The notes: generated from the letters alone by a model not told the origin. A DNA stretch of 64,000 nucleotides from IMGVR_UViG_3300024358_000009:142327-206326, one strand, 5' to 3'. Counted from the stretch's first letter, positions 188-51,073 are shown. Translations and numbers: made by a program.

Positions 188-619
188 ATGTTTAAGTTTG
201 TAGAAAAGCTATTTGGTTTTGATAGTGGTCGAATTGAGTATCTTGAATCGAAATGTTTGGAACAATCGGAGCTAATTAAAAACCTTGCAGAAGGATTTAA
301 AGAACAAACATTGTTATTGCAAAAGATAAGTGAACGAAAGCAAGATATTGACTATGACAGAATTGATATAGATTACTACGATTTGGCAAACAAGATTAAT
401 TTAAAAGCCGTAGCTAGTGGAGTAGGTCTTAAATATCTAGCAGAAGAAATTGATCTTGGCGAATTAGCCAACAATATCAGCCTAGATGATTTAAGTAGTT
501 ATTTCAATGTGGATGAAGTAGCAGCTAACTTAGACTTAAATGAGGATGATTTTGTAGATACTATTGCAGAAAAAGTTTTGGAAAAACTTGTAAATAAATA
601 TAGGGCGAAAGCCGAATAA
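188..619 (+). CDS. Hypothetical protein with about 7 tandem 9-aa repeats
   Basis: RBS GAAAGGA. Repeats of the form (I/L)D(L/Y)xxLAxx in the C-terminal half. Confidence 0.8.
   Translation: MFKFVEKLFGFDSGRIEYLESKCLEQSELIKNLAEGFKEQTLLLQKISERKQDIDYDRIDIDYYDLANKINLKAVASGVGLKYLAEEIDLGELANNISLDDLSSYFNVDEVAANLDLNEDDFVDTIAEKVLEKLVNKYRAKAE
591..619 (+). promoter_or_regulatory. Copy of the repeated phage promoter motif TAAA-N17/18-CGAATAA
   Basis: TAAA at 591, CGAATAA at 613 (spacer 18 here), followed by GTATATAG and RBS GAAAGGAG. Confidence 0.7.
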
Positions 620-640
620 GTATATAGAAAGGAGATGGTC

Positions 641-784
641 ATGATTAAGTTTACTCTGACAACTAAACAATTTGAACGCAGAGGCGTTATGGCAAGAGGA
701 AGCTCACGCTTTAAGGACGAAAGAAAAAATCCTAAAGGCGGTAGAAGTGGCGACAAAGTTAGATTTAAGAAGGGAGAATACTAA
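641..784 (+). CDS. Small basic protein (47 aa, not in ORF track)
   Basis: ATG after GAAAGGAG. MIKFTLTTKQFERRGVMARGSSRFKDERKNPKGGRSGDKVRFKKGEY. Confidence 0.6.
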   Translation: MIKFTLTTKQFERRGVMARGSSRFKDERKNPKGGRSGDKVRFKKGEY

Positions 785-1273
785 AATGGATGTTGATGTA
801 ACACTAAGTTTGGTTGAAATAAAACAAATTGTAGAATCTTTGAGATACGAAGTTAGGGTAAGCAATTACATGAGAAAACATCGTAGTGAATACGCAAACC
901 ATCTTATTGAACTATCCAATAGGTTGGAAAAAATAATGATCTATCATGCAAGGAAGGATGATAAAGTTAGATGCGAACAACCTTAGTCAAGGTTAATGTA
1001 GAGTTTATCTTGCCAGCATATCTAAGAACTAAAGAAGAAGTGGCAAGCTATATCAACACACATCTTAAGAACAACAACAATCTTAAGTATGTAATGCTTA
1101 TCGAAGGCGATGTAGAAGATTTTAACATTCAAGCAGAAAGGTTTTAACTATGATTGATTTTCTTTGCTCAATGTATTTTGCTTTGGAGTTTTACCAAATG
1201 GAAGTAATCTTTAACTTGTTCGGTGATAGGATTTTGCTTTAGACTTCTTAGAGGAATATTTCCTCTGCTAAAG

Positions 1274-1303
1274 ATTTTATCAACCCGCCCAAAATCCTGT
1301 CAA
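1274..1303 (-). promoter_or_regulatory. sigma70-type promoter, antisense to the early ORFs
   Basis: Minus strand reads TTGACA-N18-TAAAAT with extended -10 TG. Confidence 0.5.
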
Positions 1304-1596
1304 GAAAAATCCGTAAGGATTTGCAAAATAGATGAACTTTTATGAAACTTGGTTTGCTACTTTCCCAAGGGGCAAAAAAAGTAGCACTTTTAATAATGTG
1401 CTGACAGTAAGCACTTTGTTTTCATTTATTGATATAAACTCTTTGGGTTCAATGACTTATGTTTATTTTTTAAATTCTTCTTGTAAGGAATACTGGTATG
1501 TTTTCCTTACAAATATAGTGGGTAGGCTTGTCCTACCCCTTCTAAATTGACCGAAATTGGATATCTTTATCTAATTGTAATTTTAAAAAATTTTTG

Positions 1597-1624
1597 TAAA
1601 TAATTTTTATTAGCTGACGAATAA
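1597..1624 (+). promoter_or_regulatory. Phage promoter motif TAAA-N17-CGAATAA
   Basis: Exact motif and spacing. Further copies are listed under findings. Confidence 0.75.
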
Positions 1625-2027
1625 GTATATATAGAGAGGAGTAACTATTAAAATTTGAGTTATGAGTGGGAGTTCCTGCTTTCCAAAAGGAGAGGATGAG
1701 GGGAGCCTGGAAACTAATTAGATATGTTTATCTTATTATCTATTTAAGAATTTTTTTATTTTTATATAAATAAATCTGTATGGCCAACGAATAAGATTAT
1801 GTAAGAGGAAAGGAAAAGAAAATGAAATATGAAATAACAAGAGAATTCATCGGTGGTTTATTGAATGGGTTAATCATTACCCAAACCATGAATAGTGATT
1901 GTGGTTATTATGTTGGGCAAGTTGTGAAAAATCCATATGGTAACACTTCTCCATATAAAATTTTGGAAATTAGGAAATATTCTCCAATGGTCGGCGAATA
2001 AGTCTATATAGAAGAAAGGAAAGTAAA

Positions 2028-2300
2028 ATGGAAGTTAATGTAAGGGATTCAAGAAGCGTTGCAATTGGGGTCAAATATATTGGCCCAACCAATACAAGAG
2101 GTGCAAAGGTTAAAGCCTTTGTAAGATCGGCGACAAGGATGATACATAAAATTGAAATGCCTTGGGATCATGAATTCGATAATTCTGTAAATTACTGCAA
2201 TGCAGCAAAAAAATTGGTAGAAAAGATGCATTGGAGTGGAAATTTGGTCGGCGGTTGGTTAGGCGATCAATATGTGTGCGTATTCGAAAAGTGGAATTAA
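2028..2300 (+). CDS. Conserved hypothetical phage protein
   Basis: Own promoter motif (1974-2001) and RBS. KYIGPTNTRGAKVKA motif. Confidence 0.75.
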   Translation: MEVNVRDSRSVAIGVKYIGPTNTRGAKVKAFVRSATRMIHKIEMPWDHEFDNSVNYCNAAKKLVEKMHWSGNLVGGWLGDQYVCVFEKWN

Positions 2301-2395
2301 TTTTGGAAATATTTGCCAATGGTTGGCGAATAAGTATATGTAAGGTTGAGAGTTTTAATTTATAGGGCTGAAAGCCCAAGAAAGGTTTGGTCATC

Positions 2396-3532: not shown

Positions 3533-3542
3533 GATAACCCAA

Positions 3543-3616
3543 GGGGATGTAGACCAACAGGCAGAGTCAAAGGACTTAAAATCCTTCCAGTATGGGTTCG
3601 ACTCCCATCATCCCTA
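3543..3616 (+). tRNA. tRNA-Leu(UAA), short variable loop, CCA not encoded
   Basis: Acceptor GGGGATG/CATCCCT, anticodon arm AAGGA-CTTAAAA-TCCTT, T arm ATGGG-TTCGACT-CCCAT, A73. Confidence 0.92.
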
Positions 3617-3619
3617 ATC

Positions 3620-3719
3620 CCCGCCTTACCTTTCGGGCGGGTTCCCCCATCCAGCTTGTTTCGTTTCCTTTCAGGCTGGATGCCGTCTAGGGGTGGCCTT
3701 GACCTCTCCATCCCTAGAC
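3620..3719 (+). ncRNA. Candidate sRNA: three hairpins with pyrimidine-rich loops in the tRNA 3' trailer
   Basis: 7-, 11- and 12-bp stems. Each has a G-U pair that forms only on the + strand. Confidence 0.45.
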
Positions 3720-3917
3720 ATTCTTATAAATATTTTTACCTCTGTATCGAATAAGATTATATAGAGGTAACCTGCTTGTCTTAGCAATGATAAGCGGGTC
3801 GCTGGGGTATTTTACCCATATTATCTAAGTCTATATAGGCGTACCTCATCCCCAATTCCCCTTATGGAAGGCCAAGTGGGCGGGTTTTCAGCGATTCCCT
3901 CACGCTCCTGTATATAC

Positions 3918-3945
3918 TTATTCGTTATAGAAGCGGAAATATTTT
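3918..3945 (-). promoter_or_regulatory. Minus-strand copy of the phage promoter motif
   Basis: Reverse complement reads AAAA-N17-CGAATAAGTATATA. Confidence 0.65.
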
Positions 3946-4008
3946 TTTAATTTTATTTAAAATATTTTTGGTTGGTGAGCGAATAAGACTATATAAAGGA
4001 GAAAGCAA

Positions 4009-4353: not shown

Positions 4354-4637
4354 GATATAAGGGTTTAAAAAATTTTAGAATTTTTATATTATGTGCGACC
4401 CAATTATATTGGAATATGCCCATAATACCCCCTTAAACCCTAGTCCTCTCTCCTCTGTATGGTATGTACTTACATATACCTTATATATAAAGGAGTTATG
4501 TCAAATGCTTATATTAAGAGGAGTGTTAAAAAGTGGAGAAAAGTGGTGAAAAAGCCCAAAGAAAACCCCTCAAATAATACATCGAACAAAGTAAATAATT
4601 CACCCTCATAAGCGAATAAGTATATAAGGAGATAGAT

Positions 4638-7600
4638 ATGAAGGATGATTTAAAGCATAGATGTGAAGACCTATATATAGTCGAAGGGGCATCTGCTGTT
4701 TTTGACTATTGCCAGTCTATTGACCATAAAGACTATGGGGATTGTGACCAATGCCAGACTTATGTTCCTATATATAAAGATTGTTGTCTTCTTTGCGGAA
4801 CAGAATTAAAAAGAGTAAACAAAACTGTATAGATAACGAATAAGTATATAAGAGAAGTTATACATAAGGAGATTAGACATGGCTTTTACTTGGAGTGCTT
4901 CAGAGTGTGATGAGAACAATATTAAAAATGTTCATAATACAGATCAGGATAGAATAGCTTGGGCTTGTTTAGATATTGGCCTGAGTGGTATTACCCTTAA
5001 GAACTATAAAGAGTTCTACAGAAGAATGAGGCTTAGGGGCGAACTGTTCAATATCTATAAGGAGTTGACGCTAAATCACATATTTAACTGTATAGGTTTG
5101 GTCACATCTGCTGCTGATTTAAGCAAGTCTGATTTTCACAAGAAGACTATAGAGCTATTTAACTATCAGGTGGAAAGAGAAATAGCTTGTGGCCGTATCC
5201 CATAGTGTTTTTGAATTGATATAACTTGTTATTTGATAAGGAGTTATGGAAATGGTTACAAACAACACCAATACACATAGATACTTTGCCGAAGTCTTCT
5301 TCCGTTCTAAGAAGGGAAACCCCTGTGCATATCATCTGTATATGGATGGTAAAGATGAGGAGGAAGTATATGGGAATATAGTAGGGAAGGTAAAGAGACT
5401 TAAGTATTTTGACAGAGTAGATAGAGTGGACATAGTAAAAATGCAACCCCTTGATAAATAAGGACTTATATCAAATGAATAATGCACAATTCGACAATGA
5501 TATTCCCCCAATGATCTTTGAATTTAGGTTCACTTCCTACAACAAACAAGGTCAAGCTTATGAATCCAATAGGATGGTCAAGGCTTGTGGTATAGATCAT
5601 GCAGTAGAGAAATTTAACGAGGAATTTACAGATTGGGGAGAAGAAGTACCAAAGTGGGATTTAATGAACATTATGGCTATTGAAAGTAAATAAATAGCTG
5701 TTAGGGCGAATATGTAAATATAAGGATGTAGCAAACATAAGGAGGGTCAAACAATGGATGATTTCAAATATTACATTGGTGAAATTCTAGAGATTAATTG
5801 TGGTTTTGAATACGAAACAAAGTACATATTTAAAATATATGAAGATGAATCTACAGATGAACATACAGATAGAGTAGCAATGAATTGGAGGGGCGGTAGC
5901 AAGCATGATTGGGATGTAAATGAGGGCTGTTATAGATGTAGTCATACATTTATCTTTGATTCTGGATGTAAGGAAATAAGCAAAGAAGAATTCGATGTAC
6001 TATCTGAACATCTTGCCATTGTATAGAAAGGCAAATCATGGATAAGTCTAAAAAAGAACTAATACATACTGTAATTAAACAGATAGTCGATGATACAAAA
6101 CATAACTATTATGAGGGTATAACAGCATTACTTAACCATATAGATACATACAAGCTTATAGCTTTTTTACCAGAAGAAATGCATGAGAAATGGAGGGGCG
6201 ATGACTTTTAAAATTTTTAGAGAAGAACTTGTACACGAAGTATTCGACATGGTTTTAAACCATATAGATAATGATGACTATTCAGTCATATGGAAGATAT
6301 TAGATCGTATGGACATATATGAGCTAGTGGCTTTATTGCCTAAAGAACAGCGTGAGAAGTGGGATAGTTCTATTGTATAAAGGAGTAAACAATGTCTTTG
6401 AATTTAAGACAACAAGTGACATACGACATATGGAACAAAGTATTTTCAAATGTAGGTAATGAACACTACCAAACCATATGCAACATACTGGATAAACTAG
6501 ATATCTTTGACCTGTTAGGCATCTTGCCCAAAGAACATCGTAAGAAGTTTGAAGGTTATGTTATTAATTCAGATGTAATGGAGAAATAACATGGAAAGAC
6601 AAGAAAAAATCAACATTTTGATGGCCCATGACATTATGCAAATTAGAGAAGATATAGAAAATGGAGATTATGAGCTTGTTTGTTCTATTCTACAGGGAGA
6701 AGGATGGGAGCAATACAATAAGCTTACAGACTACCAAATAGATGGTGAACTTGAGGACAGATTTGTTTATGTCAATTTAAATGACAAGATTATTGATTTG
6801 GCTAATAGATTAAACGGCAAGCCTATCAAGTTAGAAACATAATACCGCCACTTATTAAAATATGGAGGTATTTTGACGAATATATAAATATAAGAAGGAG
6901 GACAGACATGAAGTTAGATATTAAAAATATGTGCGTAGTATCTGGAAAAAACAAATATCAAATTTCTTTTGATGATATAAACATCGGCGATCAAGTATAC
7001 AACCCATTATCAGATGTTCTAATTCATATAGATGAAGATGATGACATTGAATATGTAAATAATAATTATTTTAAAATCTGTTAATATTTTTTAGTAAACT
7101 GCGAATAAATATATAGGAAAGGGGATTAGCAATGAATGAAAAGCTAGAAGATTTGAAATGGTTAGATGGACGAAAGGTTTTAAACTTTGTTGGTATTTTA
7201 CCAGACGATGAGCATCAAGAATGTATTGACTGCAAGTTCACAGGACAAGTTCATGCTGAGTTTGAAGTAGAAGGATTGGAAGAAGCTGAAGTAGTTTGCC
7301 CAAAGTGTGCAAGCCTACATTACTACATTGTTTAGTACCTATACATGAAGGAAATCAATCATGAAAATCAAAGTATCGGACAGGGCGATATATGGATATA
7401 TACCAACAGAAAATCCAAATGTATTTAATAGAAAAAGCGTAGTATTTATAAAAGACCGAGGTTATTTATTCCAAGAAAATTCAGTAAAGATCATTAAACA
7501 AATATTGGATGGCATCGTATATGAAATAGAAGAATCAACACCATATGATGCTAAAACGATTATGTTGGAAAATCCAAGAAGGTATAGCAAGAAAAGGTTG

Positions 7601-9798: not shown

Positions 9799-12352
9799 TC
9801 CTATTAAATGAAAGGATTAATTATGGATGATTTTGTTTATGTGGTTAGACTTTCAGATCGTTACTACTTTGTGGGTTGGTGCAAAGTTGATGTTGTTAAT
9901 TTCTGGAGAGAAATAAAGAGCATTGTAAATAAATTATATTTTGAAACCTATATAGAAGCAGAGGAAGTTGTAAAGCTTTTAAAAAGTAAAACAACTTTAA
10001 GTTGGGAAGTTAAACAAGTTAATCTGGAGGTCAAGCTATGAAAATTGATGACGCTATTAAGATGTTGCAGGAAGCAAAAGCGGAAGGGAATAAAAATATT
10101 ATTTTTGCATTCTGGACAGCAGATATATTTACAAAAGTAAACGACAAGGGAGTTACTAAGAGTTATAAAGAAGGAGAAGTTTGGAAAAACTTGGTTGAGT
10201 TTATTGATAAAAATATGGATTGGGGTTATACGCACGAAGCATTACAAGAGATTATTAATGCTGTAAGAGGTGCTAAAAATGCATAAGAAACAAATTTTAG
10301 AATTTCTTGATGCAGAGACAGAGATAGAAGCTAGATCAAATATGTTTAGATATACAGAGTGCGGGGCGTTCATTGAATTCAAGGATGATCGTATTATAAT
10401 TGGCTCAATTGTTGAAGGATCGGAAAATGGAACTGAATATTTTGAATTTGAATATGGCAAATTTACTGCAAATGAATTCCTAGATGCAATACAAGAAATT
10501 GAAAGACAGGCTAGTATAATCTGGGATTGGGCAAATAAAGAAGATGAGAATGGTCTTACAAATGCCGAGAAAGGATATGATTGGCCACTACTATGATCAA
10601 AGAAGATTTTTTAAAATACCTGAATGCCAGTAATGAATACAGAGCTAGTGTTAATTTCAATTCTTATACAGAATATAAAGTATTCTTAAGATTTGATAAA
10701 AACTCTATTTGTTTACATACAGCAGATAATAAAAAATCTCATGTATTAGAATATGGTAAATTTACTAAAGAACAATTTGATTTGCTCGTAGATGAACTGG
10801 AGAAGTAATGCATACATATTATGCAATTAAACATTCAAATAAAAAACCATGCATTGTTGGTATGGTTCAAGCGTGGAGAAGGGATACAGCTAATAAAATA
10901 GCAGAGGTTTGTTTTGCAAAAAGAAACTCTGACAGAGTGTATTTATATGTACAACCAAAGGGTTTTGTAGATAAAAATACAAAAAAATATATTTGGAGTA
11001 AATTTAAAAAGGTTGCTGACGAATAAATATATATAGCAAGAAAGGAGTTTGATATGACCAGCATGGAAAACAAGAAAGATTCAAAAAACAAGAAACCAAG
11101 ATTATCCGATGAGGATATTCTTACTCAAGTTTTTATTCAATGTGGCCGTCCTAAAGACATAATCAAAACTGCTGTCGTTAATGTTTTTGATAATAGATAT
11201 AGAGTTAATGTATGGCAAAGCATTAACAATCCATTTCTGCCAAAAGCCGGAAAGATTGTAGCAAGTTTTTTTGTGGTTGTTACTGACGAACTAGAGGTGA
11301 AAGTAATTAAATAAAGGAAATACAATGATTGAATCGCATGGAATGCTTTTAAATTATTTTTGTGTTGACCCATCTAATTATAAAAACGAAGTTCAAATAA
11401 ACAACGATCTGTTTCCAGATGGCTTAACCATTAAAAAGGTTGACAATCTAACTGTTTTGTTAAAAGCAAAACACGCAATGAAAATCTTGTTTTATCCAAT
11501 TAAACTTAAAAAGTTAGAAACTGCTTGTAATAACTTAGCAAAAGAAATGAAGGAGGAATCCAATGAAATGGTTTCAAGATCATAGCAATGTTTGTGCATT
11601 AGCACGATGGCTGGCCGGACTTGGAGAGTGGGAAAATATTGGAGATATTGAACTTCCAAATGGACAAACTGTTGAGGACAATCCAGCCGATAGGCTTATT
11701 TACTTCTTTGAAAAACCTTGGAAATGGGATTCTGAATGGGAAGAATTTAAGAAATCTGGGCATTCGTAAGACGAATAATATAATATAGGAAGGAGGATAT
11801 AAAATGATTATACAAATTGATAACCAGTCTAGGCATATATTTGCTGTTGCTGCAAATTACCTTGTAGTAGACGAAGATAAGATCATTGGTGCTTTTATTA
11901 CTAAGCGTGAAGCTATTGCACAAGAAAAGGTATATAAAAATGCTAAAGATGATTGCATTGATCTTGTGTCTTATGATGCTTAATGGGTGTGGAACTGTTG
12001 AGCAATCTGTATCAACCAGCATATCTCCCTATGATTCTAGAGAGATAGAAAAAGTAAATGTGAGTTTTAGATATACTTATACTTTTCCAAAATAAGGAGA
12101 ATAAAATGAAAATGTATCTTATTAATGGTTATAAAGATAACCAAATTCGTGCCGGACTTCTTGAAAAAGAGTGGCAAAGTAAAAATGGCACTCCTCTTGT
12201 AACATTAAAAATTATTGACCATTACAATGAACATAAGACTGTTTACAGGACTTATCATAAAAATAAATTGGCGGTAATGAAAGTTCTTGAAATGGATGAC
12301 AATCTTTTATCTAAATAACTGTACTACTCATACTAGAAGGGTTGAAAATTAA

Positions 12353-12616
12353 ATGGCTAACAAAGGACAAAGCTGGAAACAAAATCGCTCTATTACTCCA
12401 GAAGAATTTGTAAAGGTATTTACCGAAAAGGATTCTTTTGAAGAAGTGGCAGAATATTTTGGCCTTAGTGTTTCTTCTGTAAAGAACAGGGCGTACTCCT
12501 TAAAAAGATCTGGCGTAAACCTAGTGACAAAAAAGAAAAATGCCAAACCATTTTTTGGAACTCAGGGATTTGATGTGGATTCGCTAAATAAAATCATTCA
12601 GAAGGCGAATAAATAA
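12353..12616 (+). CDS. Putative HTH DNA-binding protein
   Basis: SFEEVAEYFGLSVSSVKNRAYSL resembles an HTH. Confidence 0.6.
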   Translation: MANKGQSWKQNRSITPEEFVKVFTEKDSFEEVAEYFGLSVSSVKNRAYSLKRSGVNLVTKKKNAKPFFGTQGFDVDSLNKIIQKANK

Positions 12617-12722
12617 ATAGAGGAGACTAAAATGCCACTAAAGCCAACTGCCGGTGCTGACTATTTTTTAATCTTTGGTTGTATCTTAACTTTTGTTATA
12701 GGTCTTTTTAGGAGTAATAGAT

Positions 12723-13983: not shown

Positions 13984-13998
13984 AATATAAAGTTAATT

Positions 13999-14672: not shown

Positions 14673-15332
14673 ATGATAAATCATTTTATCGAAACTAGAT
14701 TTAATTTAAAGTATTCTTTTATAAAATATAAGAAGCATTTAAATGAAAATTGGTTAAATTATAGATTAGAATTATTTAATAAATTCTGCGCCCCATCAGT
14801 TTTAGGACAAAAAAACAAAAACTTTTTTTGGATGATTAAATGTGATTCAGAAACACCAAATGAAATCTTAAACAAAATAAAAATAGATGATAGAATACAT
14901 ATTTATTTTAATAAAGATGAAAATTTAAATATAAGAAAAGAAATTTCTAATTTAAACCATCCATTTGTTTTCTCTAGATTTGACAGCGATGATATTTATA
15001 GAAATGATTTTACAGAAGAAATAAAAAATAATTCTTCAGTATATGAAGACGAATATCTTATAGATATAAATTATTCATCTTTTGATTTATCAAAAAATTT
15101 ATTTTGTCAAAAAAATATTTATCCTTCTCACTTTGTAAGTATAAAAACAAATAATATTGAAAAAGACATTTATGAAGATAAACATGTTAATTATTCAAGT
15201 AAATATAAAATATTTAAAATAAAAGAAAATTTAGCACTAGAATTAATACATGGAAAAAATATATCTAATAAATTTAATGAAAATGCAAAAAAAATAGATA
15301 TAAATTTATCTGATTATAATATACTGCTGTAA
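14673..15332 (+). CDS. Putative rhamnosyltransferase-like glycosyltransferase
   Basis: ETRFNL, RLELFNKFCAPSVLGQ and SRFDSDD motifs. Confidence 0.7.
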   Translation: MINHFIETRFNLKYSFIKYKKHLNENWLNYRLELFNKFCAPSVLGQKNKNFFWMIKCDSETPNEILNKIKIDDRIHIYFNKDENLNIRKEISNLNHPFVFSRFDSDDIYRNDFTEEIKNNSSVYEDEYLIDINYSSFDLSKNLFCQKNIYPSHFVSIKTNNIEKDIYEDKHVNYSSKYKIFKIKENLALELIHGKNISNKFNENAKKIDINLSDYNILL

Positions 15333-15383
15333 ATAATTACTGACAATTGGCGAATAAATATTAAGCAACAAAAGGAGTTTATT

Positions 15384-16879: not shown

Positions 16880-17167
16880 ATGACATTGCCACAAGAAAGA
16901 ACAAGGAGTGTGATACAAACTAGAGATTTTTTAATAGATTTAATTAATCCCAAAAAAACGCCAAAAGTTCCAAAATACATAAGACTTTCAGCAAAAAGAC
17001 TTTTAAGACATTTTCCTTGGGATTATCATTTAAAACAAATATCTAAAAAAAATCCTGATGTATTCGGTGACATAAATGACATATTTACTTTTTCTATTAC
17101 TAATAATTTTAAGTTTTCTAACGATAAAAAGTATAAGAAAAAATCAAAAAATACTAAAAATCTTTGA
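16880..17167 (+). CDS. BPSL0761-like protein
   Basis: MTLPQERTRSV...A.RLLRHFP. Confidence 0.6.
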   Translation: MTLPQERTRSVIQTRDFLIDLINPKKTPKVPKYIRLSAKRLLRHFPWDYHLKQISKKNPDVFGDINDIFTFSITNNFKFSNDKKYKKKSKNTKNL

Positions 17168-18070
17168 AGAAGAGGCGAATAAGATTATAGATGAAAAGTG
17201 CGGTTTAGAAATATTAAAAGTTATTTGTTCAATAGAAAATAAAATACGGAAAATAAAATGACAGATGAAGAAAAAATTAAATTAGTTATAGAAACAAGAG
17301 ATGTTTTTGGAGATCCAAGAAGATTGTGTTTGCTTCTTGTTGATGAGATTAAAAATCTAAGATTAGAACTGGAAAAAGCAAAAGCATATGACTACAGATC
17401 CTATGCACCGAATGTTTGGACGCAAGCAGGAGAAAAATATGTTTTCCTGCAATAAAAAAGATGGCAATGGATTTAAAATTGGTTTTAAGAATGGATATAC
17501 TTTGTCAGTAAGATTTGGAGTAAGAAACTACTGCGAAAATTTAGGCAAAGAAGATAAGAAATTTTTAAAATCAAGTGATGCAGAAATAGCCATTATTGAT
17601 CCAGCAGGAAAGCTAATGCAATTAAATGATCAAGATGCAATATTGGCAAATCAATCAGCAGAAGATTTAGTAGAAACGCTTTTTAAATATTTTATGATGA
17701 AAAATGAAACCTATTAATGTTTTTTTATTAGTGATTTTAGCATTGGTTGGAAGTTATTATAAACAATATATTTATCACAAGGAAATTGGTGAAAAATTAA
17801 TGAATAACCTTTATGAGATGGAACAAAGAGTTATACCAGACGAATCTATTAATGATGTTCCTGCTTATTCAGAAAAACAAATGATAAAGATAAAAGTAAT
17901 TCATGAGTGCCAACAACTTATTTATGAGGAGTTTAAGTTATGGAAGTAACAGAAGAATTTATTCAAGAGATTGAAAAAGACATGCAATCCAATAATGGAA
18001 ATTGGGTTTCTAATGAAAATGTTACCAAGCTTATTGCAGAAATAAGAAGATTGAAAGGGCTTATTAAGCC

Positions 18071-20335: not shown

Positions 20336-20718
20336 TATATGGCGTATTTATATACGCTATGGAATATAGACCTTATATAGAACTGTTGATTTGGTATATA
20401 ATTTATTTTTTAATTATGTACTCTATGGAAGAAGTTCTAAATGAAAAGTAGTTATTGTCGAATAAACTAATATAACCCTAACTCAAGGAGGATTTATGTT
20501 CAAGTTTCTTAAGAATATATTTGTAAAGTCTGAAGATCAAATCAATTTAGCTATATTAAAAACAAAGTTGCAAGATCTAGAAATAGATAACAAGGATTTT
20601 GAAATAGTAAATAATAACTTAAAAGATGAAAATAAGGAACTTACTAATAGAATAAAAGAACTAAACATTAAGCTTGATTCAATTAAAATTATATTGGATT
20701 CTATTAACAAATAATTAT

Positions 20719-22442: not shown

Positions 22443-22607
22443 CTATCTTATCAAATGTTAAGATGTGTAATATTTTTATTTTTAAAATAGTCATAGCTGA
22501 TATTGATAAAAAAAATAAATCTGTTAATTTTTTGTCTTGGTTGTCGAATAAAAGAGTAGATGGTTAGTGTGTTGCTAATCGTTGTTTTTTCTTTAGGAGG
22601 AAGTATC

Positions 22608-23447: not shown

Positions 23448-25139
23448 CCATGTCATATTTTTTTAATGTTTGGATAGAATACATCGGTTGTGATAATGTA
23501 AAGAAAAGAAAGTTTTTAAAAAAAATTAATGATTATAATGATTGTTTACCATTATTATTAGAAAGCGAGTATATAAAAGAATACCTTTTTATGCCAAAAT
23601 GCATTGTTATATTAGAGGATACATTTGGAAATGACATGAGACTAAAACCATTGTTTGAAAATGATAAGTTTTTTCTTTTGTGTGAATAATGAAAAATGTT
23701 TTTTTCAAATTAAATAACGAAAAGTTTTATGTTATAGCTGGAGATACAGCTAAACGAGAAAAAGAAAAATTAAAGTGTTCTTGGAAAACATTGCTTAGTG
23801 TTTTATGTAAAGAAAATTTTCCAAATATAAAAAAGGTGACAGAAAAAACAGAAAATAATCATATTGTTACAATACCATTTTTTGAGGAGTTAATTTTTTT
23901 TGTAATGACAATTATGTATAAAGATAAAAAAATTTTTGTCGTAACAGCAAATGAAAAGGTTAAAAAGTTTAAATTAAAAAAATTTGGTAAGTGGATAGCG
24001 GAATTAGAATGTGGGCATACTTTTTTAATGGATAGCGGAGTAGATGATTACAGATTTATAAAAAGAATATTTTGTCCTACATGTATGGAGAATACCGATG
24101 GTTCAGTTTTTAAATGAATTAAAAACATTTATAGAAAACAAAAGCGATGAATGCAAACTAAAACCAGAATTAAAAATTACTGAATCAAAAATTTTGTTTA
24201 TTACATCAAATAACTATTTAATATCAAAATATTTTTTAGATGTATGCGAAAAGTTTTTGAATAATAAGAATTTAATAATTACTGAAAATAAAAAAACTTG
24301 TTTGAATTTGGAAAAATCATTAGAAGATATTGTTTCTATTATAAAAGAATCGTGTCATTATGGATTTGATCATGCAATATTATTGAATAATTATGATATT
24401 TTTTTTGATGATGAAACATGTATTAGTGTTGCAAAAGAATTAATTGATTATTCTAAAAATTCAAATGATAACTTAAAAATGATTATAATTTTGACAAACA
24501 GATCAAAAACTATAGAGCCGTTTTTAATGCACAGTCCAAATCATTTAAAAGTAAATCAAGCATGGTGTCTCGGTAAATATATTTGTAGGAAAATCGAAGA
24601 AAAGAGTATGGAGCAAATACTTTCTGAAACGATTAATGCAGTTAATGATACTCTTAATTGTAAATATTATTAAAGGCATTTCTATTGGTGTGTTTATTTA
24701 TTTTATGATTAAATTTTTAAGGAGAGGAATATGAAGTCTCTAAGATCTGATCTACACAGCGAAATTAGTACAACCAGCGGTTCTTTGGTTTTAATACCTC
24801 TAGAAAAATTTCAAGAACTAATAGGTTTTTCAGACGATGAAGATTTTGAAATTGTATCTGAAATAATTGATAACGGCGGAGATATTATAAACATAAATCC
24901 ATATGTAAATTTAGAGGTAAGAAAAAGATTTACTTTAAATGCAGACGGCACAAATGATACGGTTATTCAAATAGCACCAAAAAATGAATCTAAAGACTTT
25001 GTAAGACTTTTAAACAAGGATGAAGAGACATTAGAAGAATTTTCTTTGCGTAAGAAAAAAGAATTAAAAATGAATACCGAAGAAATGATTAAGTCATTTA
25101 CAGATATTAGAAACGAATACTTAGAAAAGATGGATATAA

Positions 25140-30320: not shown

Positions 30321-30369
30321 AATAAATACTACACCCTAATAAGCGAATAAAATGTTAAAGGAGTAAGTT

Positions 30370-46761: not shown

Positions 46762-48772
46762 ATGAAAATTTTTTTAAATCAGCAAAGCAAAACGATCCTA
46801 CAAAACCACACAAAGCTATGATTGTTGTTTACTATTCATTGCATGAAAAAGATAATCAAAATAGAGCTAATGGAAATCCGATTGAGTATGAACATAAAGA
46901 GTTTTATATTGACGGTGATGATAAATCAATATGCGAAAGAAAAGTTTTTGAACTATTAGAAATGGTAGGTAGTATATGCTCGAAAGAAAAACAGTAAATA
47001 TAAGCAAAGACCCTATTTTAACAGATAATGGTCATATATATCTTTCTTGTTCTTCTTGCAACAAAAAACTCGTTGATTTATTTATCGTAAAAAAAGATGA
47101 AAGTCTTAAATGGAAAGTGATGGCAAAATGTTGTTATTGTAACGATAAGTCTTTTATAACTGAAGTAAGCGGAATGTTTAGACCTTGTGGTATTATGAAA
47201 ATATCAGAGACAGATCCAGATGATTCTAAACTTATCACTCAGTTAGCAAATATTAAAAATGAAAATGATACAATAGTATTTTATACTAAAAAAGGAGATT
47301 GTAATGAATGATGAATACATAGATCATAAAACCACAGTAAAAGGTCTTGATTTTAATAACAAAGAAATCAGTCCACAAGATTGGTCTTGCATAGCAAAAA
47401 CATCTATTACTGAGCCAAGTAATTTACAAAGATATTTTGTTCGTGTTTGCACAGATGGTCCTGACAATGGACTTTTCTATAATCCTATGGTTCATCAACC
47501 ATCAGACCTTAAGAGATTTGATGCTTTTAAAGGAAGAAAAAGGTTTGATTTTAAGTCGGTGAATAAGGAATGCTATGATTTGTACCTTCAATTTATAGAA
47601 ACAAAAAATCCAAGTTTGTTAAAAAACGCAGAAAGGATAAGCATAAATGTCTAAGAAAAAATTGGTTTTAACAGATGAACATAAAATAATTATAGATAAA
47701 TGCTGTCAATTATTAAGCATTGATCAATTATGTAAAGCTTTAAATCTTTCAAAAGATTTGATAAATAATTATTACGAAATGGCGAATAAAAAAGCAGGAT
47801 TAAAATTTGATCAAAGACCCGGATCTGTATCTATGACACAAGCCCAGTCTATGATAGATGACACTATAAAATATGAACAAAAAAATATTTATGATTCTCC
47901 AAAATATAAAGATTGCATACATAGGACAGAATAATGATAACGCTTATAGAAGATGATTATATACAACACCAAAATGTATTTTCTGCTCAATGGATAGCAG
48001 AATTAAACGATGGAACTACTGCTTATCAAGATGATGGTCATCCAGAAAGAGATAATATCCCTTCTTGGCTTAGATTAAAGTTATATCTATTACAAAATAG
48101 ATTGAACATTGTATCATTAAAAATTAGATATAGATCTAATATTGCAGATACTTTGCCAAAAAATGCAGAGGGGTATTTTTTTTCCAATCTGGCATTTTCC
48201 ATTTTTGGTTCTCATAGCGGAAGTTGTTATGTAATAGGATATAAAGATGGAGACATAATAAAAACTGAAGAATGGCTAGTTCCAAATTTAACTCTTCTCA
48301 AGCAAGATGAAAGGCCAGTCATTATTAATGACTTTTTAATATTAAATCATGGAAGACAAATATAGCAAAAAATCTGAAACGAGAACATTTGAGTCAAGAT
48401 TTGGTGGTGGTTGGATTTCTGCTGCTCAATATTTAGCAGAAACAATGTGTGCTAGAAATGCTAAGTTTAATAAAACAGAACTTCCTCCGAAGTTTTGGAA
48501 TCACAAGCCTTGGAAAGATTATTATCTTTATCAAATAAAGCTTGCAAATAGTTTGCTTAAAAAGTATTCTCAGTCCATAATTTTTCAATCTTTGAGAACT
48601 CCAAATGGAGTTAAAGTTATTTCTTTGAAATCTCCATTTCTTCAAAAAGAAATAGCTATCATAGAAAAGAAAAGCGCTCAACAGGAAATAAAAACCACAC
48701 AAGTAGAAAACTTGGATCAAAGACCTAATTTTGTGCAGAACAAAAGTTTAAAAAGAAAGCTAGAGGAATTAG

Positions 48773-49825
48773 ATGGCCAAGAAATCTGACAAGTCAGAAT
48801 CTAAAAGTAGTGACTATTTAGAAAGAGTTATGTCTGAAGTTAATAAGCAATATGCAGAAGGAGTTGCTATTACGGCAGACAATTTATTAGATAATCCACC
48901 AGAAATTATACCTATTAGCCCTGCTTTAGATTTAGGTTTACATGGAGGGATACCAGAAGGTTCTTGGGTAACATGTAGTGGTCATCCCAAAACAGGAAAA
49001 ACATTAACATCTTTATCATTTGCTGCTGAGTGTCAAAAACAAGGCCGTCATGTTTATTACTTAAATATTGAAGGTCGTTTAAAGTCCATGAATATTCATG
49101 GTATAGAAGGTTTAGATCCTAAAAAACTAACAATTTATAGATCTGTTCCAGAAAAAATATTAACTGCTAAAGATTATTTAAATTTAGCAATGAAAGCTAT
49201 TCAGACGCATCCAAGGTCTTTAATCATTATTGATTCGGTAAGCTCTCTTTGTGATGAAAGAGAAATGGATGAAGGTATAGGTTATGAAAATCGTGGTTCT
49301 GGCAACAAGATGTTTGCTGGTTTTTGTAGGCAAGCGTCCAATCTAGTTCCCATTCAAAAAGTTATAGTTTGGTCTATTATGCACTTGGCTCAAAACCAAG
49401 GCATGTATGGTGGCTTTATTGAAAAGGGATCAAGGGCTTTACAATATCAGGCCGATGTTCAACTAAGAGTGAAATATGATAAAGCATGGACTGCTAATCA
49501 AGATGGAAAAGAAGTTCAAGTCGGTCAACAAGTTCATTGGCTTATAGAATCTTGCGCTCTTGGATCTCCAGGCATGGAAGTTGATAGTTATATTAGGTAC
49601 GGTGTCGGCATTGATAAAACATTTGAAATCATAAACCTAGGCATGGAGTTAGGTTTAATTATAAAATCTGGTGCTTGGATGAATCTTGACTATTTAAAAC
49701 GGCACATAGAAGAATCAGAAATACCAAAAGTGCAAGGTTCTGAAAAGCTTTATAAACTATTAAAAGAAAAGCCAGAATGGATAGCTCTTTTGCAAAAAGA
49801 AATAGATGATATACTAAGACCATGA
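48773..49825 (+). CDS. recA: RecA/UvsX recombinase
   Basis: LDLGLHGGIPEG, Walker A GHPKTGKT and Walker B IIIDSV. Confidence 0.9.
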   Translation: MAKKSDKSESKSSDYLERVMSEVNKQYAEGVAITADNLLDNPPEIIPISPALDLGLHGGIPEGSWVTCSGHPKTGKTLTSLSFAAECQKQGRHVYYLNIEGRLKSMNIHGIEGLDPKKLTIYRSVPEKILTAKDYLNLAMKAIQTHPRSLIIIDSVSSLCDEREMDEGIGYENRGSGNKMFAGFCRQASNLVPIQKVIVWSIMHLAQNQGMYGGFIEKGSRALQYQADVQLRVKYDKAWTANQDGKEVQVGQQVHWLIESCALGSPGMEVDSYIRYGVGIDKTFEIINLGMELGLIIKSGAWMNLDYLKRHIEESEIPKVQGSEKLYKLLKEKPEWIALLQKEIDDILRP

Positions 49826-50223
49826 AAGTAACAGGATTAGACAACAAAGAATATTCTTGGTCTATTTGGGGAAAATCCTCAGATTCGGAACAAAAATCTT
49901 CTTATCATTTAAAAGCTAGGGCATTGTTAAAAAAGTTATTTCCAATAGATAGAATTTTGGAAGAAGTTTATTTGCCGGGTTGTGATAGTTTATATGCTGA
50001 CTTTTTCTTGCCTTTGAGGAAAATAATTGTTGAGGTTCATGGAGAACAGCATTATAAATACATACCGTTTTTTCATGGCAATAAATTAAATTTTGCTAAA
50101 GCGCAAGCTAGAGATAGAAACAAAAGGCTTTTTTGTGAAAAAAATGGAATATTATATATAGATTTACCATGTAGTGAGAGTGAAGATGAGTGGAGAAACA
50201 GAATTTTGGAATGTAAATTGTAA
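49822..50223 (+). CDS. Vsr/DUF559-like endonuclease
   Basis: ADFFLP, VEVHGEQH and RD..K..FC. Confidence 0.7.
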   Translation: MKVTGLDNKEYSWSIWGKSSDSEQKSSYHLKARALLKKLFPIDRILEEVYLPGCDSLYADFFLPLRKIIVEVHGEQHYKYIPFFHGNKLNFAKAQARDRNKRLFCEKNGILYIDLPCSESEDEWRNRILECKL

Positions 50224-51073
50224 TAAAGATTTTTTTGAGTCTTTGCATAGCCCATTTGAAAATAATCTAGGCTTAACTTTTACTCCAGAAAATCCAAATG
50301 AATGTATGCGATTATTAAATTTATCGCATGATCAATTAAAAGTAATGACTTCTGACCAATGTGGCGAAGCAGCATTGTTGCTTCATAATTTTTCATTTAG
50401 ACTGACTAAAGAAATAAGTTCTAAAAAAGCATTACTTAATTATTATAGAGAATGTTTTTATAAAACTATTAGCAAATATGTATCAGACATAAAATATCTT
50501 TCGGCAGAAGAAAGAATTGCTATAGCTGCTGAACAAGATGATTATGCTAAAAAGTTAAAATTTAGCATTGTTAAACTTCAATATATTATTGATCGTGTTG
50601 AGTATTTGCCCATGAAAGTAGATAAAGTAGCAGATATGTTTAACAGTTTACAAATAGCTAGGAGAGTTAGAAATGACAATAGTAGAATTGCTTAACAAGG
50701 CTTTAGAAGAACAAAGTTTTTCTTATGTAGAAGAAGCTTTATTTAATTTAACTGGTATTAAACCAGAATCTAAAAAATCGACTAAAAAAAGAGTAAATAA
50801 AAAGAAAGAACTGGCGAATAAAACTATAGACTCTGATTTTGTAAATAATTTTGTTGATGATTTATCAATACATCCAGAGCTTGTTGAAAAAAATATAAAA
50901 AAGGTTAAAAAAAATTACAGACCAGAATATACCGAATCCTTAATTGATGTTAGTTGTTCAAAGTGCGGTTCTAAAGAAAGGGTTGAAAAAGAAGAGTTTT
51001 ATTCATTGGCTAGGTTATCAGAAGGATCTTATCTATATACTTGCCCAAAATGTATTAAAAGGAATTTATCAAG

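What the first reader, a model, noticed from the sequence alone, without database searches (positions are those of the whole stretch)
591..50821. About 23 copies of a sigma28-like bipartite promoter, TAAA-N17-CGAATAA
Seen: CGAATA(A/T) preceded by TAAA (sometimes GAAA, TTAA or AAAA) with a 17-nt spacer at 1597, 1767, 1974, 2306, 3727, 3959, 4592, 4816, 6856, 7081, 10999, 11751, 12585, 15330, 17155, 20438, 22524, 30323, 47762 and 50794. Spacers of 18 and 16 occur at 591 and 5687, and a minus-strand copy lies at 3918-3945. Most copies are followed by a TATA-rich stretch and an RBS. Those at 47762 and 50794 are inside CDSs upstream of recA and dnaB. Known: the FliA/SigD consensus is TAAA-N15-GCCGATAA. 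This motif can be written TAAA-N15-NNCGAATAA. Inference: the early/middle programme is run by a FliA/WhiG-type sigma, either phage-encoded outside this window or the host's flagellar sigma, which could tie infection to motile cells.
Basis: partly seen in the sequence, partly recalled or inferred. Interest (0 to 1): 0.8.

Follow-up and report, generated by a model that had tools for sequence, protein, structure and literature searches.

The report
Promoters for a phage's own sigma factor
The repeated TAAATA-N15-CGAATAA signal is real and is most likely the promoter type used by a small ECF-like sigma factor that this uncultured ~150-kb river phage encodes 4.3 kb upstream of the window; this is a familiar phage strategy found in a new phage group.

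Summary
TAAA-N17-CGAATA occurs 16 times in the window against 0.43 expected. I add 55776 and a weak copy at 24595. Nine more copies lie just upstream of the window in the same genome.

The motif has three conserved parts: TAAATA(A), then 15 nt, then RR-CGAATAA, then T12/A13 counted from the C. The spacing is rigid. Copies are almost all on the gene strand and usually sit 24-50 nt before a start codon that has a ribosome-binding site.

The window is the end of a 206-kb river-metagenome contig; the true genome is about 150 kb. At window -4769..-4281 sits a 162-aa sigma factor with sigma2 and sigma4 domains. It is ECF-like by family models, nearest relatives and predicted fold. It falls far below the FliA/WhiG cut-off. 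Its gene has a sigma70-like promoter of its own, and the motif array begins about 410 nt after it.

Seven related phages keep this layout. In one relative the -35 box is TGAATA, and only this sigma has diverged strongly.

Verdict: these are phage-sigma-dependent early/middle promoters. "FliA-type" and "host flagellar sigma" do not. No transcript 5' ends could be mapped. This is a new member of a known kind.

The parts
591..626 (+). Promoter copy with an 18-nt TAAA-to-CGAATAA spacer, C at 613. RBS and ATG at 641.
   Evidence: (PWM 23.8)
1597..1631 (+). Promoter copy, C at 1618. Best match to the consensus. Followed by an SD-like GAGAGGAG but no nearby ATG.
   Evidence: PWM 38.7; orthologous copy at L062 15951
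1767..1801 (+). Promoter copy, C at 1788. ATG at 1822.
1974..2008 (+). Promoter copy with GAAATA as the -35 box, C at 1995. ATG at 2028.
   Evidence: (37.1)
2306..2340 (+). Promoter copy with GAAATA, C at 2327. A 69-nt leader with a hairpin precedes the DUF932 gene.
   Evidence: (37.2); orthologous copy at L062 16585
3727..3761 (+). Promoter copy, C at 3748. It faces a ~150-nt non-coding stretch.
3911..3945 (-). The only minus-strand copy, C at 3924. It converges on the copy at 3748.
   Evidence: (22.9)
3959..3993 (+). Promoter copy with AAAATA, C at 3980. ATG at 4009.
4592..4626 (+). Promoter copy, C at 4613. The RBS starts at +13/+14 and the ATG is at 4638.
4816..4850 (+). Promoter copy with TAAACA, C at 4837. 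ATG at 4879.
5687..5720 (+). Promoter copy with a 16-nt spacer and CGAATAT, C at 5707. ATG at 5754.
   Evidence: (18.9)
6856..6890 (+). Promoter copy with CGAATAT, C at 6877. ATG at 6908.
   Evidence: (19.3)
7081..7115 (+). Promoter copy with TTAATA, C at 7102. ATG at 7132. The strain variant keeps this promoter in front of a different gene.
   Evidence: (L044 14781)
10999..11033 (+). Promoter copy, C at 11020. ATG at 11054.
11751..11785 (+). Promoter copy with GAAATC, C at 11772. ATG at 11804.
   Evidence: (19.1)
12585..12619 (+). Promoter copy, C at 12606. RBS and ATG at 12632.
   Evidence: (33.6)
15330..15364 (+). Promoter copy, C at 15351. ATG at 15384.
17155..17189 (+). Promoter copy, C at 17176. 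No RBS and ATG immediately after it; the next ORF starts at 17258.
   Evidence: 29.0
20438..20472 (+). Promoter copy, C at 20459. ATG at 20496. It heads the unit that contains the DUF1501 gene.
22524..22558 (+). Promoter copy with TTAATT, C at 22545. A 63-nt leader precedes the ATG at 22608.
24574..24608 (+). Weak candidate copy with CGAAGAA, C at 24595, inside ORF 24098-24673.
   Evidence: PWM 18.8
30323..30357 (+). Promoter copy, C at 30344. ATG at 30370. It restarts rightward transcription after the minus-strand gene block at 26988-30320.
47762..47796 (+). Copy inside ORF 47647-47934, C at 47783. It lies 151 nt before the next ORF and ~990 nt before recA. It lacks the T12/A13 element.
   Evidence: (27.5)
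50794..50828 (+). Copy inside ORF 50673-51077, C at 50815, 259 nt before the dnaB start.
   Evidence: (31.3)
55755..55789 (+). Copy inside ORF 55301-56008, C at 55776, 268 nt before dnaE. In a relative whose DNA is 76% identical, both boxes are kept while the spacer has changed.
   Evidence: 24.2; L036 5778

Best explanation
The motif is the promoter class read by host core RNA polymerase carrying a phage-encoded, ECF-like two-domain sigma factor, here called sigma162. Its gene lies at window -4769..-4281, just outside the window.

Proposed sequence of events:
1. The host's primary holoenzyme transcribes a short immediate-early unit at the head of the rightward arm. This unit holds a 66-aa ORF, a DUF6445 gene, a 2OG-Fe(II) oxygenase gene and the sigma162 gene. 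The candidate promoters are sigma70-like: TTGTGC-N18-TATAAT at -6501..-6472 and TTGTTT-N17-TATACT at -4854..-4826.
2. Sigma162 then directs the polymerase to at least 34 promoters of the form TAAATA-N15-RRCGAATAA. Its sigma4 domain reads TAAATA and its sigma2 domain reads CGAATAA.
3. Transcription starts at about the conserved A at +13 from the C, which is 7 nt after CGAATAA. The leaders are very short.
4. These promoters drive the many small takeover-type ORFs, the DNA-modification and nucleotide-metabolism genes and, from copies inside ORFs, the replication genes.
5. The late structural arms lack the motif. They probably use a second, sigma4-less sigma-like protein, here called sigma210.

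Shown by the tools: the motif and its statistics, geometry, orientation and conservation; the sigma gene and its class; the shared layout in relatives.

For: 1. Promoter-like anatomy.
- The spacing is rigid: 74 of 79 TAAA-bearing copies are at exactly 17 nt.
- The motif is not palindromic.
- 33 of 34 copies are on the gene strand.
- In this genome, 21 of 33 copies have an RBS and start codon 24-48 nt after the C.
- Across the clade, 52 of 73 copies have an RBS and start codon within 70 nt of the C. The RBS never begins before +13.
- T12 and A13 are conserved in 60 and 69 of 74 copies, although they were not used to select the sites.

2. A fitting sigma sits next to the array.
- The 162-aa protein matches Sigma70_r2 (3.6e-7) and r4 (1.1e-5).
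- It passes TIGR02937 at 53.5 bits against a cut-off of 42.9.
- It matches phrog_1740, annotated as sigma factor, at 1e-16.
- The AlphaFold2 model has mean pLDDT 86, with sigma2 at residues 7-84 and sigma4 at 104-161. ECF sigmas are the best fold matches.
- The first motif copy starts about 410 nt after the gene, and none lies upstream of the gene.

3. The sigma gene itself has a different, sigma70-like promoter. It sits inside a ~100-nt block that is nearly invariant in three phages and recognisable in two more.

4. Conservation across relatives. Relatives whose sigma162 is 59%, 35%, 33% and 28-29% identical keep the same gene order, with a motif array straight after the sigma gene:
- L062, 14 copies in 6 kb.
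- L066, 9 copies.
- L034, L004 and L019.
Orthologous promoters, for example before the GP88-like gene and before dnaE, keep both boxes and the spacing while the spacer sequence changes.

5. Co-variation. In L182 all five copies have TGAATA in place of TAAATA.
- Its sigma162 homologue is only 26% identical to that of L062, and the alignment stops at the sigma4 recognition helix.
- Its sigma210 homologue is 71% identical to that of L062.

6. No other promoter signal. Sigma70-type sites are not enriched in window 1-20000: 82 found against 90.9 expected.

7. Precedent. Phage 7-11 gp47 reads GTAAtg-N16-aCTA (PMC8948821). The ECF sigma PvdS reads TAAAT-N16-CGT (PMC2235872).
Against: - No transcript 5' ends were obtained. 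The river metatranscriptome runs are held only as assembled contigs, and those contigs break at strain junctions rather than at promoters.
- Sigma210 is much better conserved (53-92%) than sigma162 (28-77%). That pattern parallels the near-invariance of the motif.
- L066 keeps TAAATA although its sigma4 helix differs strongly from that of the window phage.
- In L066 and L004 a motif copy precedes the sigma162 gene itself. The first sigma162 molecules then need read-through transcription, another promoter or a pre-existing host reader.
- About 43 kb of the ~150-kb genome was not seen. It lies in the structural arm behind a 4134-aa tape-measure gene. A phage RNA polymerase there is unlikely but not excluded.
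Confidence: 0.7

Rival explanations
1. The motif is read by a host alternative sigma (FliA, an ECF sigma or a SigH/ComX-like sigma) rather than by a phage protein. The phage sigmas then serve other promoters.
For:
- The CGAATA core equals the streptococcal SigX box TACGAATA (PMC6001120).
- In L066 and L004 the sigma162 gene itself is preceded by a motif copy, so some reader must exist before sigma162 is made.
Against: - A sigma of the right architecture is encoded directly upstream of the array in every relative.
- The -35 box changes together with that sigma in L182.
- In the window phage the sigma gene has a different, sigma70-like promoter, which suggests an ordered cascade.
- Relying on a conditionally expressed host sigma for 34 or more early/middle promoters would make infection depend on host state. 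No evidence for this was found.
- The host is unknown, so its promoters could not be compared.
Confidence: 0.1
2. The second phage sigma-like protein, sigma210, is the reader of the motif. Sigma210 is 210 aa, lies at window -7186..-6554 on the minus strand and is the second gene of the leftward arm. Sigma162 would then serve another promoter set.
For: - Sigma210 is strongly conserved across the clade (53-92%), as is the motif.
- It has a sigma region-2-like segment: 94.7% hhalign probability over 57 columns against the ECF profile.
- It also sits next to the start of the rightward arm.
Against: - No region-4 helix-turn-helix is detectable. The hhalign match covers region 2 only, and the C-terminal part lacks the usual EIA..LG.S..TV pattern. 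The model is of low confidence, with mean pLDDT 66. This fits poorly with a fixed-spacing -35/-10 promoter.
- It heads the arm that carries terminase and portal genes, and that arm has no motif copy.
- A different single-element candidate, GGTGTAAT, sits before the portal gene and other late genes. That would suit a sigma without region 4.
- L062 and L182 have 71%-identical sigma210 proteins but different -35 boxes.
Confidence: 0.1
3. The motif is the promoter of a phage-encoded RNA polymerase, single-subunit or multisubunit, whose gene lies in the unseen part of the genome.
For: - The stretch CGAATAAGTATATAG, with TATA just before the predicted start, loosely recalls T7-type promoters. This comparison rests on my own knowledge.
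- About 43 kb of the genome was not inspected.
Against: - Two boxes separated by a sequence-free 15-nt spacer, plus an upstream A/T tract, is the hallmark of sigma-dependent bacterial polymerase. Phage single-subunit polymerase promoters are contiguous, about 20 nt long.
- No polymerase gene was found in ~106 kb. Pfam was scanned on all ORFs of at least 150 aa in the window and on the upstream genes, and precomputed Pfam labels cover the flanks.
- The unseen part lies inside the structural gene arm.
- Two sigma-like genes are present.
Confidence: 0.04
4. The motif is not a promoter but an operator for a repressor or another DNA-binding protein, or a site for RNA processing.
For: No experimental start sites are available.
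Against: - The motif is asymmetric and bipartite with helical-phase-fixed spacing.
- It is strictly co-oriented with the genes.
- It has a sharp minimum distance to ribosome-binding sites.
- It is the only enriched promoter-like signal in a region of many short, separately spaced genes.
- Repressor operators are usually palindromic and few in number.
Confidence: 0.03

Closest known systems
Phage-encoded sigma factors with their own promoter class. Examples: Salmonella phage 7-11 gp47 (GTAAtg-N16-aCTA) and coliphage phiEco32 gp36 (tAATGTAtA), both from PMC8948821. From my own knowledge: SPO1 gp28 and gp33/34, and T4 gp55.
   Same: - A phage sigma redirects host core polymerase to phage-specific promoters that sigma70 does not read.
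- As with 7-11 gp47, the sigma has region 4 and the promoter is bipartite with a 16-17-nt gap and a GTAA-type -35 box.
- The sigma gene itself lies behind a sigma70-like promoter.
   Different: - There is no detectable close sequence relationship. Sigma162 has only three 50%-identity clusters below E 1e-10 among 1.8 billion representative proteins.
- The class here covers the early/middle arm with 34 or more copies, many in front of tiny ORFs. In 7-11 the sigma serves eight late promoters.
- A second sigma-like gene probably handles late genes.
- The function here is untested.
ECF (group 4) sigma factors and their promoters, in particular the PvdS iron-starvation box TAAAT-N16-CGT (PMC2235872)
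   Same: - Two-domain sigma2-linker-sigma4 architecture of about 160-200 aa.
- The protein passes the sigma70-ECF superfamily model, and its best fold matches are SigH, SigL and SigE.
- The promoter is TAAAT-N16-CGA, identical in geometry to the PvdS box and almost identical in sequence.
- In some relatives the sigma gene carries its own motif, which suggests autoregulation.
   Different: - It is below the cut-off of every specific ECF subfamily model.
- The -10 element is longer, CGAATAA, and is followed by a conserved T12/A13.
- No recognisable anti-sigma partner was identified. Only a small Cys-rich ORF follows the gene, and it was not tested.
- It is encoded by a virus and is used as a general programme switch rather than as a stress response.
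FliA/WhiG (sigma28) promoters, TAAA-N15-GCCGATAA
   Same: TAAA as the -35 box, and CGA placed 17 nt after it.
   Different: - The -10 element is CGAATAA rather than GCCGATAA: one base longer, with purines in place of GC.
- The phage sigma lacks region 3 and scores 35 bits against a FliA_WhiG cut-off of 189.6.
- Sigma28 ranks only 22nd among fold matches.
- No flagellar context is present.
Streptococcal SigX (ComX) box TACGAATA (PMC6001120)
   Same: - The core CGAATA is identical.
- The box is followed by a start codon about 20-25 nt later.
- From my own knowledge, ComX is also a sigma of about 160 aa.
   Different: - SigX boxes have a T-tract but no fixed -35 box.
- Nothing suggests a Firmicute host for this river phage.
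- Relatedness of sigma162 to ComX was not tested.

Membership tests
FliA/WhiG (sigma28, group 3) sigma factor and regulon | Sigma protein with regions 2, 3 and 4 (about 240 aa) that reaches the family model cut-off | tested here: not met
   The phage sigma has 162 aa, with sigma2 at residues 7-84, a disordered linker and sigma4 at 104-161. It has no region 3. It scores 35.3 bits on TIGR02479 against a cut-off of 189.6, and 26 bits on NF005413 FliA against 201.
FliA/WhiG (sigma28, group 3) sigma factor and regulon | Promoter consensus TAAA-N15-GCCGATAA | tested here: inconclusive
   TAAA and the 17-nt distance to CGA match. The -10 element is RRCGAATAA rather than GCCGATAA. The same geometry fits the ECF sigma PvdS (PMC2235872).
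FliA/WhiG (sigma28, group 3) sigma factor and regulon | Controls flagellar or chemotaxis genes; FlgM-type anti-sigma factor | tested here: not met
   The downstream genes are phage small ORFs and DNA metabolism, modification and replication genes. FlgM was not searched for specifically.
ECF-type (group 4) sigma factors | Two-domain sigma2 + sigma4 protein without regions 1.1 and 3 | tested here: met
   Pfam r2 and r4 only. AlphaFold2 model with mean pLDDT 86. Top fold matches are ECF sigmas SigH, SigL and SigE. Full-length phmmer alignment to M. tuberculosis SigH.
ECF-type (group 4) sigma factors | Reaches a curated family cut-off | tested here: met
   It reaches the broad superfamily model only: TIGR02937 sigma70-ECF at 53.5 bits against 42.9. 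It is below the cut-off of every specific subfamily. All 60 nearest representatives match TIGR02937.
ECF-type (group 4) sigma factors | Bipartite promoter with a conserved -35 box and a CG-containing -10 box 16-17 nt apart | tested here: met
TAAAT-N16-CGA with rigid spacing; compare PvdS TAAAT-N16-CGT (PMC2235872).
ECF-type (group 4) sigma factors | Co-transcribed anti-sigma factor and positive autoregulation | tested here: inconclusive
   A motif copy precedes the sigma gene in L066 and L004 but not in the window phage. A 55-aa Cys-rich ORF follows the gene; it was not analysed.
Phage-encoded sigma factors (PHROG 1740) | Match to the phage sigma family profile, and location in a phage genome next to a phage-specific promoter set | tested here: met
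   phrog_1740 at E 1.1e-16. The layout is shared by seven related phage contigs.
Phage-encoded sigma factors (PHROG 1740) | Holoenzyme with host core polymerase initiates at the motif | not testable with these tools
   This needs in vitro transcription or 5'-end mapping. Read laying returned only assembled contigs.

The most novel reading that the evidence does not exclude
An uncultured, widespread clade of ~150-kb freshwater phages runs a three-tier sigma cascade built from two unrelated-looking phage sigmas. The host is possibly a planctomycete.

The proposed order is: host sigma70, then the ECF-like sigma162, then the sigma4-less, zinc-ribbon sigma210.
- Sigma162 would read TAAATA-N15-CGAATAA at 34 or more early/middle promoters. 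In some lineages it would be autoregulated.
- Sigma210 would read the single-element late promoter GGTGTAAT.
- A type II hammerhead ribozyme cuts the sigma162 transcript right after its stop codon. This would set the dose of the switch.
Probability: 0.3. Interest if true: 0.6.

Novelty: new member of a known kind. Interest (0 to 1): 0.45.

Why it matters
- The finding gives a ready-made transcription map for the early/middle half of an abundant but uncultured river and lake phage group. It supplies promoter positions, predicted start sites and operon heads.
- It pairs that map with a candidate orthogonal sigma/promoter pair: a 162-aa sigma and a ~35-nt promoter. One natural specificity variant exists, TGAATA.
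- Pairs of this kind are useful as orthogonal expression parts and for studying how ECF-type sigmas read AT-rich -35 boxes.
- It shows that a promoter resembling a FliA promoter need not involve FliA. The TAAA-N17-CG geometry is shared by group 3 and group 4 sigmas.
- As biology it is an expected strategy. A phage bringing its own sigma is well known, so the surprise is moderate.

Tried and rejected
- **Known phages.** Megablast of window 1-20000 against GenBank phages found no match, so no annotated relative is available.
- **Start-site mapping.** Six river metatranscriptome runs hold the sequence, but only as assembled contigs. There are no read ends and no "places where molecules begin". 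Contig breaks at about 7122 reflect a strain variant, not promoters.
- **Sigma70-type promoters.** The scan found fewer sites than in shuffles, both in the window (82 against 90.9) and upstream (21 against 34.6). Intrinsic terminators are not enriched either.
- **Alternative reading with TATATA as a sigma70 -10 box.** Rejected. No conserved T sits at the last hexamer position. No -35 box lies 17 nt upstream. The start would fall inside or after the ribosome-binding site.
- **Non-coding RNAs behind the promoters that lack an ORF.** Rfam finds only two tRNAs in the window. The 152-nt stretch between the convergent copies at 3748 and 3924 does not fold better than shuffles, with z-scores of -1.5 and -0.9.
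- **Literature.** A search for CGAATAA as a sigma promoter found nothing relevant.
- **Walking the genome past the tail genes.** This stopped at a 4134-aa tape-measure gene whose full sequence I could not obtain.
- **Close relatives of the sigma by pattern scan.** Only identical copies came back. Distant relatives had to be found through the protein searches.
- **GTGTAAT as a late signal.** It is not enriched overall: 9 occurrences against about 24 in shuffles. Only its placement before late genes is suggestive.
- **Host identification.** Only a lead was obtained. The DUF1501 protein is 65-70% identical to proteins of Planctomycetota.

Full report
**1. The observation**

The pattern TAAA-N17-CGAATA matches 16 times in the 64-kb window, 15 times on the + strand. 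Dinucleotide-preserving shuffles give 0.43, with a maximum of 2. CGAATAW alone is about twofold enriched, 32 against 15.3.

This includes the 18-nt and 16-nt spacer variants at 591 and 5687 and the minus-strand copy at 3918-3945. A position weight matrix built from these sites adds a full copy at 55755-55789 and a weak one at 24574-24608.

**2. Anatomy of the motif**

Aligning the sites on the C of CGAATAA shows three conserved parts:
- (G/T)TAAATA at -22..-16.
- Two purines followed by CGAATAA at -2..+6.
- A "TATA" region in which T+12 and A+13 are the conserved positions.

An A/T-rich tract lies upstream of -24.

To avoid circularity I collected every CGAATA in seven non-redundant phage segments, which gave 154 unique contexts. 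TAAA lies exactly 17 nt upstream in 74 of them, at 18 nt in 4 and at 16 nt in 1. About 1.6% is expected by chance. Several positions were not used for selection yet are strongly conserved: T-17 in 71 of 74, A-16 in 69 of 74, T+12 in 60 of 74 and A+13 in 69 of 74. The 13 spacer positions between them carry no information.

Across the clade, 52 of 73 sites have a Shine-Dalgarno-like sequence and a start codon within 70 nt of the C. In this genome, 21 of 33 sites have the start codon 24-48 nt after the C. The Shine-Dalgarno sequence never begins before +13, and it begins at +13 to +15 in ten sites.

That sharp limit, together with the T12/A13 pyrimidine-purine step, leads me to predict initiation at about A+13. 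It is an inference.

**3. What the window is**

No GenBank phage is similar at the DNA level.

The window carries these genes:
- Many small ORFs and two tRNA-Leu(UAA) genes.
- A C5-cytosine methyltransferase, a DUF1501 gene and several glycosyltransferases.
- A minus-strand block that includes a cobalamin adenosyltransferase gene.
- ThyX, peptide deformylase, a class II ribonucleotide reductase and a radical-SAM gene.
- RecA, DnaB, a primase and a split dnaE interrupted by an intein.

No ORF of at least 150 aa in the window is a sigma factor or an RNA polymerase subunit.

The window is identical to the last 64 kb of IMG/VR contig 3300024358_000009, which is 206,326 bp and comes from a river metagenome. 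Two copies of the DUF1501 gene, 100% and 91% identical, lie exactly 149,856 bp apart in both long contigs. The real genome is therefore about 150 kb. The long contigs are about 1.4 genome lengths and join two strains. The strains part at window ~7131, which is also where the metatranscriptome contigs diverge.

**4. Extending beyond the window**

From fetched loci I joined 10.8 kb upstream and 27.7 kb downstream to the window.

The motif occurs nine more times between -3851 and -388, all on the + strand. It is absent further left. It is also absent from the 64-92 kb region, which holds glycosyltransferase genes and then minus-strand tail genes, including a 4134-aa tape-measure gene.

The motif is therefore confined to the rightward early/middle arm. 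It is densest over the first 11 kb, with 21 copies in front of tiny ORFs. It thins towards the replication genes, where the copies lie inside ORFs 150-270 nt ahead of the next gene.

**5. The sigma factor**

The rightward arm begins at about -6440 with a 66-aa ORF, a DUF6445 gene and a 2OG-Fe(II) oxygenase gene. A GC-rich hairpin follows, then an AT-rich region, then a 162-aa ORF at -4769..-4281.

This ORF has the following matches:
- Pfam Sigma70_r2 (3.6e-7) and Sigma70_r4 (1.1e-5).
- It passes NCBIfam TIGR02937 (sigma70-ECF superfamily) at 53.5 bits against a cut-off of 42.9.
- It is far below the FliA_WhiG cut-off, 35.3 bits against 189.6.
- phrog_1740, annotated as RNA polymerase sigma factor, at 1e-16.

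Against 1.84 billion representative proteins it has only three clusters below 1e-10. Beyond those it matches ECF-sized proteins over its full length. All 60 that I aligned match the ECF-type model, and most match named ECF subfamilies.

The AlphaFold2 model has mean pLDDT 86. It shows a sigma2 bundle at residues 7-84, a disordered linker and a sigma4 helix-turn-helix domain at 104-161. The best matches in the PDB are M. tuberculosis SigH and SigL and E. coli SigE in initiation complexes. Sigma28 ranks 22nd.

The sigma gene is not preceded by the motif. It is preceded by TTGTTT-N17-TATACT, inside a ~100-nt block that is almost invariant in three phages. The block is also recognisable in two more distant relatives, as TTGATT-N17-TATACT and TTGTTT-N17-TAGATT. 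A second sigma70-like site, TTGTGC-N18-TATAAT, lies 36 nt before the first ORF of the arm.

The first motif copy starts about 410 nt after the sigma gene's stop codon.

**6. Relatives**

Homologues of the sigma were located on contigs. Every contig long enough to judge shows the same layout. A leftward arm carries a second sigma-like gene, an HTH protein gene, GDP-mannose dehydratase, an ERCC4 nuclease, terminase and portal. A rightward arm carries sigma162 followed by small ORFs.
- L062, sigma 59% identical: 14 motif copies in the 6 kb after the sigma gene and none elsewhere.
- L066, 35% identical: nine copies, one of them 72 nt before the sigma gene's own start codon.
- L034, L004 and L019, 28-33% identical: arrays as well.

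Orthologous promoters keep both boxes and the 15-nt gap while the spacer sequence differs. This holds before the GP88-like gene in six phages. It also holds for the copy inside an ORF before dnaE, in a relative whose DNA is 76% identical. That is the footprint of a functional two-box element.

**7. Which protein reads the motif**

Both sigma162 and the second protein, sigma210, occur in all members.

Sigma210 is much better conserved. It aligns to ECF sigmas only over region 2. It carries a Cys/His cluster, and I could detect no region-4 helix-turn-helix in it. It heads the arm with the late genes, which has no motif.

In L182 all five promoters after the sigma gene read TGAATA-N15-CGAATAA. 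The sigma162 homologue of L182 is only 26% identical to that of L062, which uses TAAATA. The alignment ends at the recognition helix of sigma4. The two sigma210 proteins are 71% identical. The -35 change thus tracks sigma162.

The argument is not airtight. L066 keeps TAAATA with a very different sigma4 helix.

I assign the motif to sigma162 with about 0.7 confidence. The host-sigma and sigma210 rivals get about 0.1 each.

**8. Comparison with known systems**

The principle is classical: a phage sigma retargets host core polymerase.

The closest documented case in form is Salmonella phage 7-11. Its gp47 sigma, which has region 4, reads GTAAtg-N16-aCTA. The region-4-less gp36 of phiEco32 reads the single element tAATGTAtA (PMC8948821).

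The promoter itself is nearly the iron-starvation box of the ECF sigma PvdS, TAAAT-N16-CGT (PMC2235872). Its core equals the streptococcal SigX box TACGAATA (PMC6001120). FliA promoters share the TAAA-N17-CGA geometry. The protein evidence rules out membership of the FliA/WhiG family.

**9. Limits**

- No 5' ends were mapped. The single read-laying run returned only assembled contigs.
- The host is unknown.
- About 43 kb of the genome, in the structural arm, was not seen.
- That sigma162 binds core polymerase and these promoters is an inference.

**10. Verdict**

The finding is a real and statistically overwhelming promoter class. It is best explained as the regulon of a phage-encoded ECF-like sigma located just outside the window. 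It is a new member of a known kind, of moderate interest.

Noticed in passing
Outside the window: L058 10489-10544 (window about -4281..-4226); L062 10480-10540; also L067 ~6037-6095 and L180 ~1060-1094: A type II hammerhead ribozyme sits directly after the stop codon of the phage sigma gene. It scores 38.4 bits in L062, against a gathering score of 37, and 29.7 bits in the window phage. The CCGAAA and CUGAUGAG cores are conserved, and both stems show compensatory changes among three phages. It may trim the sigma transcript.
   Followed up: partly
Outside the window: L045 10164-10796 (+ in that locus) = window -7186..-6554, minus strand: A second sigma-like protein of 210 aa. It has a region-2-like segment (hhalign 94.7% against the ECF profile), a Cys/His cluster and no recognisable region-4 helix-turn-helix. 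It is 53-92% conserved across the clade and is the second gene of the arm that carries terminase and portal. It is a candidate late sigma.
   Followed up: partly
window 8366-8374 and 59784-59792 (+); L058 3204-3211 and 356-363 (-); supercontig about window +74760 (-); L062 3602 (-); L066 3231 (-): The single element (t)GGTGTAAT(t/a) lies 25-50 nt before the start codons of several genes. These are the portal gene in three phages, two other late-arm genes, and the two homing-endonuclease-like ORFs of the window (HNH at 8407 and DUF559 at 59810). It is a candidate late promoter. The word is not enriched overall.
   Followed up: partly
window 20987-22267 (+): The DUF1501 protein is 65-70% identical to proteins of freshwater Planctomycetota genome bins, such as Gemmataceae from Lakes Baikal, Mendota and Erken. 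Those loci have 44-68% G+C, against 30% for the phage. The gene is conserved at 69-100% in about 30 related viral contigs. This is a host lead or an old gene transfer.
   Followed up: partly
window 1-7131 versus 7132 onward; IMG/VR contigs 3300024358_000009 and 3300024509_000007: Both long contigs are about 1.4 genome lengths with a period of 149,856 bp, and they join two strains. The strains are identical up to window ~7131 and only 67-84% identical afterwards, with gene replacements just behind conserved promoters. Metatranscriptome contigs diverge at the same point.
   Followed up: partly
window 3727-3945: Two motif copies converge, + at 3748 and - at 3924, across about 150 nt of relatively G+C-rich non-coding DNA just after tRNA-Leu. 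There is no Rfam match and no significant fold on either strand. The purpose is unknown.
   Followed up: partly
Upstream of the window at about -2630; L004 ~2960; L019 ~6545; L034 ~1030; L066 ~12435; loose end of an RNA contig at window 6894: Several promoters are followed not by an RBS but by a conserved leader, GCTTGAGGGTAATGCTWAACCCGCCATG. The window phage has GGTGGT...AACCATC instead of GAGGGT...AACCCGC, which may be partly compensatory in a short hairpin; I compared these by eye only. This may be a small RNA or a structured leader.
   Followed up: no
window 56044-61830: dnaE is in pieces. The PHP and polymerase core are at 56044-57957. The finger domain and an intein N-part are at 58835-59782. 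An HhH part is at 60703-61830. An RNase T-like exonuclease gene (58207-58872) and a DUF559 endonuclease-like ORF (59810-60739) lie between them.
   Followed up: no
window 3543-3616 and 9726-9798: Two tRNA-Leu(UAA) genes, about 91% identical to each other.
   Followed up: no
Outside the window: L045 8436-8464 region (window -4854..-4790): The ~100 nt before the sigma gene are almost invariant across phages whose sigma proteins are only 59-76% identical. The 5' leader includes a direct repeat, GCAATGC-N6-GCAATGC. This may be a regulatory site for sigma expression.
   Followed up: no
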